This document shows positions 28,219 through 35,554 of a DNA stretch of 64,000 nt, one piece after another. The notes beneath the pieces were generated by a model. The model was not told the origin of the DNA. It searched no databases and saw nothing but the letters and a program-made list of their open reading frames with translations. The DNA is from Iphione sp. A-MEVVRFRX5. Taxonomy: Eukaryota. Position 1 is the first letter of the stretch; the number at the start of each line of letters is the position of its first letter. A program made the translations under genes and the position numbers. The stretch is from the NCBI GenBank assembly GCA_976226885.1, contig OZ320313.1:100130001-100194000 (forward strand). Reading direction: 5' to 3'.

Positions 28219-28330
28219 ATGCCTCAATGGGGAGGGGGCAACAAATGCAACCAATGCGGGAAGACTGTCTACTTCGCGGAGCAGATGGTTGCCGCCGGGA
28301 AATACTACCACAAAGGTTGCTTCAAGTGCT
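28219..28330 (+). CDS. CSRP: CRP/MLP LIM protein, coding exon 1 (LIM1 N-half)
   Basis: Acceptor ttttctag|gtcaacATG. Encodes MPQWGGGNKCNQCGKTVYFAEQMVAAGKYYHKGCFKC, the classic CSRP N-terminus. Phase-1 donor GTAAGT at 28331. Confidence 0.97.
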
Positions 28331-28582
28331 GTAAGTATATAACCATATATGTACATGCTCACCTAAAAACACACACTAATGATTTCATCTCTGGCGTGCT
28401 GCCGATGAGTCACTTCCCTTTAAAGTAAACGTTTTCCTCTGTCGCTATTATACTCTGTTTAGTTTTTTTTTTCTAACTGATGGGTAAAAAGCTTATAAGG
28501 CCTATGTATGGAGAGGGACGATCGCAGCACTATTACTCGTAATGTCTCTCATTAAAGCGCTCTTGTGACTTCTTTCACATAG

Positions 28583-28770
28583 CTTCGTGTAAAAAGAGTC
28601 TCGACAGTACCAACTGCAACGAACACGAAAACTCTCTCTTCTGTTCGGGATGCTACCGAAAATCGTTTGGTCCGAAAGGCTACGGCTTCGCCTCTGGCGG
28701 TGCAGGACTCTCGACAGATGGCGCCACTAAGAGTGAGCCAGAGCGGAATTCAGTTATAACAGGTCTACAG
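28583..28770 (+). CDS. CSRP: CRP/MLP coding exon 2 (LIM1 C-half, Gly-rich repeat, linker)
   Basis: Acceptor tttcacatag|. Encodes SSCKKSLDSTNCNEHENSLFCSGCYRKSFGPKGYGFASGGAGLSTDGATKSEPERNSVITGLQ. Phase-0 donor GTAACG. Confidence 0.97.
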
Positions 28771-30285
28771 GTAACGTGTCATCATTTAGGCAGACAAAAT
28801 GGAATTATCAGTTAGAAATAAAATTCTTCTCACGACAAAAACTGATTTTCTAAGGGAGTTTTATGGAGGAAATGAACAGAGAACAGGATTTATCATATGC
28901 TAATTATATGTATTATGTAATACATGTATTACATCTTTATACTTGTACATGCATGCTAATACAGGTAATCTAAGATCACCTTTTCAAGATTTTCTAAAGT
29001 GAAGATTCATAAAACACTTCAGATTTACTTCCAAGATAAATGCTCAAACAGAACATAATACATTTTACTCATATTCCGACAGTGTGGCGTTTTAAATTAA
29101 TTTATAAGACATATACATGCGTAGATTTCTATGGAAATATTTGCAACCAAAGTAAATTTATGCTATCTGGGCAAGTCATGTGATTGATTCTCCATGACAA
29201 CCCAGCGTATTTTATTAAATTTCAAGCTTCAACAGATGGCTTAACATGTAACCTTGCTTTGTGCCAAAACTGAGAAATATTCATGAAGGATTAATTGTCT
29301 AAAATGTACGATAAGCCTATGGGCGGTCTGGAAGGAGTTAATTGAATAGATGCAAATGATTTCATGGTGTCCGGGAACAGGAGGTTCATTATATGATTTG
29401 CACTGATTGTCGCTGAACATTTATGTTGTACCGTAAATATCAGGGACGGGTCAATTCTGATCTGTCCCACAGTTTCGCCCAAATTAGGCATGTTATCAGT
29501 GTAGTTCTTTTACCCGTTGGTTCTTGAAACCTTGTTCCCTTCTCCGGTTTGGTCTTCCCTGCCATATGGTCCTTACCCAGGCCTTTCCACTGTACCTACT
29601 TAATTGAGTGTGTGAATATGATCACCACTGTTGTCCCAAGATGTCTTGTATAACTTATGTTAGCTCCTGTCATTCAGCACGAATGTTCGATTCGTTCCGT
29701 CAAGACACATTTAGACTAATTTTAAAATCTATTTAACTGTAAAAGTTACATATCTGGAGCGAATTAACAGTTTCCAACCTAAAGGATATTCACTGATTAT
29801 ACACAGACAATTTGTAAACAAATGTGTTTGATTCAGAGGTTTTCCTCTTATGTTACAAACCCAACCACAATTTCACAGCTTTCTCTTGTTCGCTTGGGTT
29901 ATCGTCAGGGGTCACTGTGGCCAATGCGTTGGATTCGTCCTTTAACAGGTACATGTACACCATTATTCCCGATGGAAATAAAGTCCTCTTCATACTCCCT
30001 ATCACAAATGTACAGTAGGAACACCCCCAATTAGTCAGCCATAGTTCCAGTCAAATGTATTACGATTAAAACAGGTGAACACTGCACAGAGAGATAGTTA
30101 ATGTGTGAAGTATTCTAAAGTCATTAGTAGGAGGTGACCCCTGGAGAGTGATGGCCGTTAAGGCAGTTCCTACTGTACTGCGCATTAGAGGCCTAGGGTA
30201 CATGTGAGAGAGTGAGACCATGATTCCATATCAATCCAGTCCTAATTATCATGTTAATACTGATATATTTTGTTTCCACCGTTAG

Positions 30286-30406
30286 AATCAGGGCCCAGTC
30301 GATCCAGACCCTTACCAGAACTGCAGCGCGTGTGGCACCAAAGTATACTTTGCGGAAGAGATGATGGTGTTGGGGCAGAAGTGGCACAAAGCATGTTTCA
30401 AATGTT
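30286..30406 (+). CDS. CSRP: CRP/MLP coding exon 3 (LIM2 N-half)
   Basis: Acceptor tttccaccgttag|. Encodes NQGPVDPDPYQNCSACGTKVYFAEEMMVLGQKWHKACFKC. Phase-1 donor GTAAGT. Confidence 0.96.
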
Positions 30407-34090: not shown

Positions 34091-34672
34091 CAGGTTCTGT
34101 GATCAACCAAACCTTTATAAAGTTTTTATATTTGTGATCTGCAGAGACTATTTCATTCATAACTTACATGTAGAAAGTCATACAGTTGGTATAAAAAATA
34201 ATATGTATGATACTTTTATTTAACCCTTAAGCCTAACAAAATTATGTGTAGTTCCAATAATATGCTGAAACAATATAGTGTTGGTAGATAGGTATATTCT
34301 TTTTTCGTTTTTGTTGGAGCCTGAGGACCATAAATGTATATTTTCAAGCCACAAACTACCCTTCCACTGAATGGATCCTAATGAAACTTATACCTGAGGA
34401 CCTTAGGAAGAAAGAGTCCGTAGCTTCATTTGTTCCCCAGATATTAAGAAAACTAATACTGTTCTTTAAAGGTAACAATGGCCTCAAATTAGGGCCGGCC
34501 GAGTTACAGGAAACAAACATTTTTTACTTGGCCTAACCATAATATAAAGTCACTGAATTAAGTTCATAGTTCTAACACCAGGTGCTCAGTATTTTTACGT
34601 CGCCCACCGTTGACAACTAGGGATCATCTTTCATGTTTTCTATCGTATTTACCCTACACATCTCTCTTGAAG

Positions 34673-34793
34673 AACGAGGGACCTGTGGATGAAGATCCTA
34701 TGCAGAACTGTGGCCGATGTGGGACAAAAGTATACTTCGCTGAGGAATTGGTGGCTCTGGGACGAAAATGGCACAAGGCTTGCTTCAAGTGTG
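34673..34793 (+). CDS. CSRP: CRP/MLP coding exon 5 (LIM3 N-half)
   Basis: Acceptor tctctcttgaag|. Encodes NEGPVDEDPMQNCGRCGTKVYFAEELVALGRKWHKACFKC. Phase-1 donor GTGGGT. Confidence 0.95.
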
Positions 34794-35414
34794 GTGGGTT
34801 TCTAATAATTAAATCGAAATTGAATATATAATAATACGATTCTGACAGTTGAAGTATACAGGCATCATACCGCATTAGCCTGCAAGCACATATATTGATA
34901 GAAAACACCCAATAAAGTAAAAAATGTATAGAAAATAAGCACTATTTTTGTTTTGTCACTGAAGTCTGAATGAATCGTCTCGCTTTGATCACTTATACTT
35001 GGATTGGATCGGAATCTACTCTCGGAGAATATTCATCTGGCGCGGCAAGTTGATCGGAAGGATCTGTGGTCTTCCATCGCTAAACTATCTCTGATCTAAC
35101 GATGTATTTCAGAGCTTTATATATATTTATTACTTCTGGTATTAATGACACTACAAGGCAGATGAAACGATATATTATATATTTGTTGGAATCTTTTAAA
35201 AGCGTTCATTTTCAAAATAACTGTGTCAACAGTTTATGCTGCCAAATATTTCCTGTAAAGTTTTAATTTGTCGATTTCTGCAATGTTCAATGTCTGGTCT
35301 GGTGGTTGGACCTCCCTCCCCCTTTCAGGCAGGAGACCAAAAGGGAGAGAGTATGTGCATTATCCAAACAAAGTTTTATATTATTACCTGGTATATCTTC
35401 TGTTCTCTCGCCAG

Positions 35415-35554
35415 CCGACTGTCATCGCACCATGGATCCGGGCGCCATTAACGACCACGACGGCGAGCTCTACTGCAAGTCCTGTCACGGCAAGCGCTTC
35501 GGGATAAAAGGTTACGGCTTCGGCGTTGGGGCCGGTACACTAAGTATGTCCTAG
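35415..35554 (+). CDS. CSRP: CRP/MLP coding exon 6 (LIM3 C-half, Gly-rich repeat, stop); full protein 287 aa
   Basis: Acceptor ttctctcgccag|. Encodes ADCHRTMDPGAINDHDGELYCKSCHGKRFGIKGYGFGVGAGTLSMS then TAG. The six exons total 864 nt (288 codons) in one frame. Confidence 0.96.

What the first reader, a model, noticed from the sequence alone, without database searches (positions are those of the whole stretch)
28219..35554. Three-LIM CRP/MLP whose middle LIM domain is a chimera made by duplicating exon 2 + exon 3
Seen: six exons splice in frame to a 287-aa protein with three CX2C-X17-H-X2-C-X2-C-X2-C-X17-C-X2-C LIMs, each followed by a G[PI]KGYGF glycine-rich repeat. Known: vertebrate CSRP1-3 have two such units and Drosophila Mlp84B has five, so three is unusual. 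By hand alignment, exon 2 and exon 4 share 39/47 residues while exon 4 and exon 6 share 19/46. Exon 3 and exon 5 share 31/40 residues and are both 121 nt, while exon 1 and exon 3 share 16/28. Inference: the duplicated unit was [E2+E3], not a whole LIM. LIM2 would therefore join the N-finger of ancestral LIM2 to the C-finger and Gly-repeat of ancestral LIM1, a new domain built from half-domain exons.
Basis: partly seen in the sequence, partly recalled or inferred. Interest (0 to 1): 0.75.

Follow-up and report, generated by a model that had tools for sequence, protein, structure and literature searches.

The report
Three-LIM muscle protein with hybrid middle domain
This is an intact gene for a three-module CRP/muscle-LIM cytoskeletal protein in a probably annelid worm; its middle zinc-binding domain was made long ago by duplicating two exons out of register with the domain boundaries, which is a clear example of a known way that repeat proteins grow.

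Summary
Six GT-AG exons (28219-35554, + strand) splice in frame to a 287-aa protein. It has three exact CRP-type LIM domains, each followed by a glycine-rich repeat.

Exon 2 resembles exon 4 (45/60 residues) and exon 3 resembles exon 5 (31/40; both 121 nt). E1/E3 (17/33) and E4/E6 (19/45) are much less alike. Introns share no similarity.

The same six-exon gene exists in a second species (L001). An intron-less mRNA-like contig from a third species (L002, protein P0270, 81% identical) joins all six exons. Synonymous sites between the three are saturated while 77-82% of residues are kept, so every exon is under purifying selection.

Half-domain trees group C1 with C2 (97/89) and N2 with N3 (96/88). 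An AU test rejects C2+C3 (p 0.03). The duplication predates the three species.

Two corrections:
- Three-LIM CRPs are common in invertebrates. Only the staggered register is unusual: 4 of about 160 multi-LIM CRPs examined.
- The intron lies after the fifth zinc ligand, not between the two fingers.

No RNA data were available for this species. Interest is moderate.

The parts
28219..28330 (+). E1: start codon plus the N-half of LIM1 (zinc site 1 and the first Cys of site 2). It ends in phase 1. An acceptor-like AG lies just upstream of the ATG, so an untranslated upstream exon is likely.
   Evidence: 92% identical to the L001 ortholog exon.
28583..28770 (+). E2: C-half of LIM1, glycine-rich repeat and first part of the linker. 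Phase 1 in, phase 0 out. First exon of duplication unit A.
30286..30406 (+). E3: rest of the linker plus the N-half of LIM2 (121 nt). Second exon of unit A. Of ancestral-LIM2 N-half type.
   Evidence: Aligns end to end with L002 520-640.
30662..30843 (+). E4: C-half of LIM2, glycine-rich repeat and linker. A copy of E2 (45/60 aa; 74% nt over 141 nt). First exon of unit B. Of ancestral-LIM1 C-half type.
34673..34793 (+). E5: linker plus the N-half of LIM3 (121 nt). A copy of E3 (31/40 aa; 71% nt).
35415..35554 (+). E6: C-half of LIM3, a divergent GIKGYGF glycine repeat and the stop codon. Of ancestral-LIM2 C-half type.
   Evidence: forms a clade with the C3 halves of L001, P0270 and P0286, 98/97
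31950..34050 (.). GC-rich (54%) insert of about 2.1 kb inside intron 4, ending in a (TG)n / 16-nt microsatellite. It is not part of the protein. It explains why intron 4 is 3829 nt here but 866 nt in L001.

Best explanation
This is a functional gene for a CRP/MLP-family cytoskeletal LIM protein: three LIM-plus-glycine-repeat modules joined by disordered linkers. It arose from a two-LIM ancestor with exons A1-A2-A3-A4 by a tandem duplication whose breakpoints lay in the two intra-LIM introns. Both of those introns are phase 1 and sit at the same position, after the fifth zinc ligand. The copied segment was [C-half of LIM1 + Gly repeat + linker, with its phase-0 intron, + N-half of LIM2], about 303-309 coding nt, so the reading frame was kept. 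The result is A1-A2-A3-A2'-A3'-A4. LIM1 and LIM3 are the ancestral domains. LIM2 is a hybrid: five zinc ligands come from the LIM2-type exon and three from the LIM1-type exon. The event is old. It predates the split of three species whose synonymous sites are saturated, and the hybrid domain has been kept under purifying selection. By analogy with CRP1-3 and Mlp84B, where each LIM-Gly module is an actin or alpha-actinin binding unit, the third module most likely adds valency for actin-filament bundling or Z-disc-type scaffolding in muscle. Shown here: the gene model, the duplication register, its age, selection, and a transcript in a relative. Inferred: the recombination mechanism and the cellular function.
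For: Gene model and symmetric phases. Exon-pair identities. DNA similarity is confined to the exons, with unrelated introns. The same six exons, sizes and phases occur in a second species (L001). An intron-less 2193-nt contig L002 carries 5' and 3' UTRs and encodes the 291-aa P0270 (81% identity), with all exon blocks contiguous. Selection: 67-74% of fourfold sites differ between species, whole-protein dN is 0.13-0.16, and no exon exceeds dN 0.23. Trees and AU tests: C1+C2 97/89 and C2+C3 rejected at p 0.03; N2+N3 96/88 and N2 orthologs 97/93; the six units form a clade at 99/99, and within-species pairing of units is rejected at p 0.013. The annelid 2-LIM gene (Paralvinella, L003) has the same phase-1 intra-LIM introns, with [C-half + linker + N-half] as a single phase 1-1 exon. 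Among 32 three-LIM and 126 four-to-six-LIM CRPs, only WIN, L001, P0270 and P0286 show the staggered pattern. AlphaFold2 on P0270 gives pLDDT above 90 for all three LIMs, with identical secondary structure and disordered linkers. Family assignment: Pfam LIM; PDB CRP1 1b8t at E 3.4e-20.
Against: No RNA evidence from this species: no run was listed, so read laying could not be used. The AU test against E1+E3 is only marginal (p 0.058), and the half-domain alignments are very short (28 and 46 columns). In the more distant relative P0286 the two units pair with each other rather than with their counterparts here (AU p 0.0005). Either the event is not single, or concerted evolution has acted, which weakens simple dating. 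The library type of run ERR14707600 (source of L002) could not be checked, so a retrogene instead of an mRNA is not formally excluded. Function is inferred by homology only.
Confidence: 0.75

Rival explanations
1. Two-step origin. A whole two-LIM gene was first duplicated in tandem. A deletion or unequal crossover then ran from the intra-LIM intron of LIM2 in the upstream copy to the intra-LIM intron of LIM1 in the downstream copy and fused them. The product is the same A1-A2-A3-A2'-A3'-A4 and the same hybrid LIM2; only the path differs.
For: The end product and all similarity patterns fit equally well. CRP genes are multi-copy in many invertebrates.
Against: It needs two events where one suffices. 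There is no remnant of a second CRP gene or stray CRP exons in the 64 kb. Introns are too diverged to show a junction.
Confidence: 0.12
2. A whole LIM module was duplicated (E3+E4 copied from E5+E6, or E1+E2), and gene conversion later overwrote E4 with E2 sequence. The E2/E4 likeness would then be secondary, and LIM2 was not born as a hybrid.
For: Whole-module duplication is the register seen in the other multi-LIM CRPs examined. The units of P0286 pair with each other, so concerted evolution may act in this family.
Against: E2/E4 similarity extends through the unconstrained linker tail up to the shared phase-0 intron, and E3/E5 similarity starts right at that intron. This is what one contiguous copied segment predicts. 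Within the three species the units do not pair by species (AU p 0.013), so there has been no recent conversion. Conversion would also have to stop exactly at exon borders, because introns share nothing.
Confidence: 0.06
3. The two units are used as alternative cassettes. Skipping E3+E4, E2+E3 or E4+E5 removes 303-309 nt and keeps the frame, so the main products could be two-LIM isoforms, and the 287-aa protein would be a minor or artefactual model.
For: All three skips are frame-preserving. NCBI lists Mlp84B-like isoforms of 496, 402 and 351 aa for one barnacle gene, which suggests module skipping occurs in the family.
Against: The only transcript-like contigs of relatives (L002, L004) carry all three LIMs. 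Every exon is under strong purifying selection. The phases force use of whole units, not single exons.
Confidence: 0.1

Closest known systems
Vertebrate CSRP1/CRP1, CSRP2/CRP2, CSRP3/MLP
   Same: The LIM spacing is the same and a glycine-rich GPKGxG repeat follows each LIM, with no other domain. The N-terminus MPQWGGG resembles that of CRP1. The best solved-structure match is CRP1 1b8t (E 3.4e-20, both modules aligned). PMC3305314 describes the class.
   Different: Vertebrate proteins have two modules (about 193 aa); this one has three (287 aa). Its middle LIM combines a LIM2-type N-half with a LIM1-type C-half.
Drosophila Mlp84B and Mlp84B-like multi-LIM CRPs (arthropods; molluscs such as Magallana, Pinctada, Haliotis; annelid Ridgeia)
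   Same: They belong to the CRP family and have more than two LIM-Gly modules made by internal duplication (PMC2120973).
   Different: They have four to six modules. In them the N-half and C-half similarity peak in the same pair of modules, which is the whole-module register (for example Magallana LIM3/LIM4 at 100/100). Here the peaks are offset by half a module.
Annelid two-LIM CRPs (Paralvinella palmiformis P0299; Logan transcripts P0304, P0007)
   Same: These are the nearest two-LIM relatives of the duplicated halves. Their LIM1 C-halves are sister to E2/E4 and their LIM2 N-halves lie next to E3/E5. They have identical phase-1 intra-LIM intron positions.
   Different: They have only two modules, and [C-half + linker + N-half] is one exon without the linker intron. 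Their N1 and last C-half belong to other subtypes.
Three-LIM 'cysteine and glycine-rich protein 1-like' proteins of molluscs, Owenia and the sponge Ephydatia (P0288-P0295)
   Same: Same size class (271-326 aa), with three CRP LIMs.
   Different: None shows the staggered pattern. P0287 has a whole-LIM1 duplicate and Ephydatia a whole-LIM2 duplicate; the rest have three dissimilar modules.

Membership tests
CRP/MLP (CSRP) family of LIM-only proteins | LIM domains with the spacing CX2C-X17-H-X2-C-X2-C-X2-C-X17-C-X2-C | tested here: met
   Three exact matches at residues 10-61, 113-164 and 214-265. Pfam PF00412 matches each half.
CRP/MLP (CSRP) family of LIM-only proteins | A glycine-rich repeat directly after each LIM | tested here: met
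   GPKGYGF, GPKGYGF and GIKGYGF start 6 residues after each LIM.
CRP/MLP (CSRP) family of LIM-only proteins | No other domain, and closest sequence relatives are CRPs | tested here: met
   Pfam finds only LIM above its cut-off. PDB best hits are CRP1, CRP2 and MLP. Named database relatives are all CRP or Mlp84B-like proteins.
CRP/MLP (CSRP) family of LIM-only proteins | Binds F-actin or alpha-actinin and localises to the actin cytoskeleton or Z-disc | not testable with these tools
   Inferred from family knowledge only (PMC2139825, PMC1318456).
Vertebrate-type CSRP1-3 architecture | Exactly two LIM-Gly modules | tested here: not met
   Three modules here, also in L001 and P0270.
Mlp84B-type multi-LIM CRP | Five tandem LIM-Gly modules whose similarity is in whole-module register | tested here: not met
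   Three modules. N23 and C12 are high while N12 and C23 are low.
In-frame tandem exon (segment) duplication | The copied unit is bounded by introns of equal phase and its length is a multiple of three | tested here: met
   E2+E3 = 309 nt and E4+E5 = 303 nt. Both units are phase 1 to phase 1, with an internal phase-0 intron at the same site.
In-frame tandem exon (segment) duplication | The copies are each other's closest relatives in trees that include other species | tested here: met
   The six units of three species form one clade at 99/99. u12 orthologs group at 83/75. Species-wise pairing is rejected at p 0.013.

The most novel reading that the evidence does not exclude
LIM half-domains behave as interchangeable evolutionary modules. 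Because the old phase-1 intron sits at the same place in every CRP LIM, out-of-register duplication can create new hybrid LIM domains that work. It may have happened twice independently: once in the lineage of this gene and once in that of P0286, whose own two units pair with each other (AU p 0.0005 against shared orthology). The hybrid would then be a natural domain-swap experiment, kept by selection over a very long time.
Probability: 0.3. Interest if true: 0.5.

Novelty: new member of a known kind. Interest (0 to 1): 0.36.

Why it matters
This is a clean, datable case in which the unit of duplication is offset by half a domain from the unit of folding. It produced a hybrid zinc-binding LIM domain, with five ligands from one parent and three from the other, and that domain has been conserved since. 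It shows how intron positions and phases decide which repeat expansions are possible. It also suggests that the two halves of CRP LIM domains tolerate new partners, which is useful for people who engineer or model LIM and zinc-finger modules. For muscle biology it adds a third route to multi-LIM CRPs, besides whole-module duplication as in Mlp84B. It does not reveal a new kind of protein or mechanism.

Tried and rejected

Intron similarity between the two units: none found, so no breakpoint could be mapped.

Further CRP exons or a second CRP gene in the window: none.

Full-length query: the spliced protein has no reference and was not typed in. I searched with exon E4 against the representative library. 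I then ran the word search with an alignment of relatives plus exon pieces, which brought in the ortholog P0270. P0270 was then used as the query.

Metagenome scan with P0270: only four distant multi-LIM CRPs at 32-48% identity, none staggered.

NG86 dS is not computable because synonymous sites are saturated. I replaced it with fourfold-site differences.

ORFs in the intron-4 insert and elsewhere in the window gave no Pfam match.

Five paper searches found nothing on staggered half-LIM duplication or on annelid CRPs. The library lacks most subscription journals, so this is weak evidence for novelty.

The idea that all multi-LIM CRPs grow by the staggered unit was tested and rejected: four-to-six-LIM proteins show the whole-module register.

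The species could not be identified. 'Annelid' rests on the nearest relatives and on earlier unchecked notes.
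Full report
**Gene model**

The region was read and the exon borders were fixed by script.
- The six + strand exons are 28219-28330, 28583-28770, 30286-30406, 30662-30843, 34673-34793 and 35415-35554.
- All introns are GT-AG and the exon start phases are 0/1/0/1/0/1.
- The exons join into an 864-nt CDS encoding 287 aa.
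- An in-frame TAG lies two codons before the ATG.
- A regex finds three exact CX2C-X17-H-X2-C-X2-C-X2-C-X17-C-X2-C LIM domains. Each is followed, six residues later, by GPKGYGF, GPKGYGF or GIKGYGF.
- Pfam sees only PF00412. E1, E3 and E5 match model positions 1-29; E2, E4 and E6 match positions 31-58.
- The intra-LIM intron falls one base after the fifth zinc ligand. The 'N-half' exons therefore hold zinc site 1 plus the first cysteine of site 2.
- The window has no N and no other CRP-like exon.

**Internal similarity**

| Exon pair | Identical residues |
|---|---|
| E2/E4 | 45/60 |
| E3/E5 | 31/40 |
| E1/E3 | 17/33 |
| E1/E5 | 18/33 |
| E2/E6 | 18/45 |
| E4/E6 | 19/45 |

- At DNA level only the exons match: E2/E4 at 74% over 141 nt and E3/E5 at 71% over 125 nt. 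The introns share nothing, so the duplication is old.
- E2+E3 is 309 nt and E4+E5 is 303 nt. Both units run from phase 1 to phase 1.
- Both units carry an internal phase-0 intron at the same point in the linker (..GLQ|N.GPVD..). That intron was therefore already present in the copied segment.

**Family**

- E4 matches chicken CRP1 (1b8t, both modules, E 3.4e-20), quail CRP2 and MLP among solved structures.
- An exhaustive search with E4 gave 769 relatives. These include CRPs with three to six modules, named 'muscle LIM protein Mlp84B-like' or 'cysteine and glycine-rich protein' in snails, barnacles and shrimps.
- Word searches added four- and five-module proteins of bivalves, gastropods and the annelid Ridgeia.
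- They also added three-module proteins of 271-326 aa from Littorina, Dreissena, Gigantopelta, Candidula, Owenia and the sponge Ephydatia.
The class review PMC3305314 describes CRPs as typically two-LIM, and PMC2120973 describes the five-module Mlp84B.

**Orthologs**

- P0015 is an ORF fragment 75% identical to E4. It led to a 290-kb ENA contig (L001).
- L001 carries the same gene: six GT-AG exons of 112/185/121/194/121/140 nt, the same phases, 290 aa.
- P0270 (291 aa) is 81% identical over the full length. It is encoded without interruption on a 2193-nt Logan contig (L002) with 219 nt of 5' UTR, an in-frame stop before the ATG, and about 1.1 kb of 3' UTR.
- The exon blocks of the window align to L002 back to back. 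E3 aligns end to end with L002 520-640.
- L002 is most simply a spliced mRNA containing all six exons.
- No RNA run was listed for the window itself.
- P0286 (284 aa, 53% identity, JGI contig L004) is a more distant three-LIM relative.

**Selection and age**

- Between the three species, 67-74% of fourfold-degenerate third positions differ. This is close to the random 75%, and NG86 dS cannot be computed.
- In contrast, 77-82% of residues are identical, whole-protein dN is 0.13-0.16, and no exon exceeds dN 0.23.
- All six exons, including E3 and E4, are therefore under strong purifying selection, and the architecture is older than a deep species split.

**Trees**

| Test | Result |
|---|---|
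| C1+C2 halves of the three species form one clade | 97/89; lies inside a group with LIM1 C-halves of annelid two-LIM CRPs (94/78) |
| C3 halves, with P0286 C3, form a separate clade | 98/97 |
| AU test: C2+C3 as one clade | rejected (delta lnL 20.4, p 0.03) |
| N2+N3 halves form one clade | 96/88; lies beside the LIM2 N-halves of the two-LIM annelid proteins |
| N2 orthologs group together | 97/93 |
| AU test: N1+N2 as one clade | marginal (p 0.058, 28 columns); N1 lies elsewhere in the tree |
| Six whole units (about 103 aa) form one clade | 99/99 |
| Unit-A orthologs group together | 83/75 |
| AU test: the two units of one species pair with each other | rejected (p 0.013) |
| Orthology of unit A with the first unit of P0286 | P0286's two units pair with each other (97/97); orthology rejected (p 0.0005) |

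The last result means one of two things. Either the same staggered duplication happened again in the P0286 lineage, or concerted evolution erased the signal in one lineage.

**How special is the register?**

- Among 32 three-LIM proteins, only WIN, L001, P0270 and P0286 combine high N2/N3 and C1/C2 identity with low N1/N2 and C2/C3 identity.
- Other three-LIM proteins show whole-module duplicates: P0287 and P0079 for LIM1, Ephydatia for LIM2.
- None of 126 proteins with four to six modules shows the offset pattern. Their N and C identities peak in the same module pair.
- The annelid Paralvinella two-LIM gene (L003) has the same phase-1 introns after the fifth ligand of both LIMs. It encodes [C-half + Gly + linker + N-half] as one phase 1-1 exon. 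This shows the symmetric unit that makes the staggered copy frame-safe.

**Structure**

AlphaFold2 was run on the ortholog P0270 with a 25-row alignment.
- All three LIMs have pLDDT above 90 and the same strand-and-helix pattern.
- The linkers have pLDDT below 50.
- The hybrid LIM2 is modelled as confidently as the two parental domains.
- The model is of the relative, not of the window's own protein, because the spliced sequence has no reference.

**Interpretation**

The best reading is a single in-frame tandem duplication, or unequal crossover, with breakpoints in the two intra-LIM phase-1 introns of a two-LIM ancestor. This gives A1-A2-A3-A2'-A3'-A4, in which only the middle LIM is hybrid.
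- A two-step route (gene duplication followed by fusion) gives the same product and cannot be excluded.
- Whole-module duplication followed by gene conversion is less parsimonious. The similarity runs through the unconstrained linker up to the shared intron, and the units do not pair within species.
- In-frame skipping of one unit could yield two-LIM isoforms. That remains untested.
- Function is inferred from the family: an actin and alpha-actinin associated scaffold in which an extra LIM-Gly module adds binding valency.

**Organism**

The nearest two-LIM relatives are annelid. Earlier unchecked notes of this scan call the genome annelid. I could not name the species.

**Novelty**

Five paper searches found no description of this staggered origin. 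The principle, that repeat expansion by exon duplication can be out of register with domain borders, is established knowledge. I therefore rate this as a new member of a known kind, of moderate interest.

Noticed in passing
window 31950-34050 (intron 4): GC-rich (54%), G-skewed block of about 2.1 kb, ending in a (TG)18 and a 16-nt microsatellite at 33984-34045. It holds a 212-aa ORF (32028-32666) with no Pfam match. It is single-copy in the window and absent from the 866-nt intron 4 of L001. It is probably a decayed insertion.
   Followed up: partly
window 52872-52980; L001 16130-16238: A 109-nt block 78% identical between the window and L001, same strand. It lies 17.3 kb downstream of the CRP stop here and 4.4 kb downstream in L001. 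It coincides with the 63-aa microprotein ORF noted by another reader (s1-317882), so that element and its synteny with the CRP gene are conserved across saturated synonymous distance.
   Followed up: partly
window 36805-37000: Tandem repeat of a 31-nt unit (also scored as 62 nt), about 6 copies at 72-80% identity, 1.2 kb downstream of the CRP stop codon.
   Followed up: no
L003 11442-11771 (Paralvinella palmiformis JAODUP010000310.1): In this annelid two-LIM CRP gene, the C-half of LIM1, the glycine repeat, a roughly 45-residue linker and the N-half of LIM2 form one exon, bounded by phase-1 introns. The linker intron seen in the window's gene is absent.
   Followed up: yes
L004 (JGI 3300060324, protein P0286): A clear three-LIM CRP is named 'ribosomal protein L31' by its source, which is a mis-annotation. 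Its first N-half is of the annelid two-LIM type (VYFNEE), unlike the CSRP1-like MPQWGGG start of the window's protein, although its last C-half groups with E6.
   Followed up: partly
window 28205-28218; L001 7660-7678: An acceptor-like pyrimidine tract plus AG lies directly upstream of the start codon in both species, and similarity to the L002 5' UTR stops 8 nt before the ATG. The gene probably has an unlocated non-coding first exon, as mouse Csrp2 does (PMC2529283).
   Followed up: no
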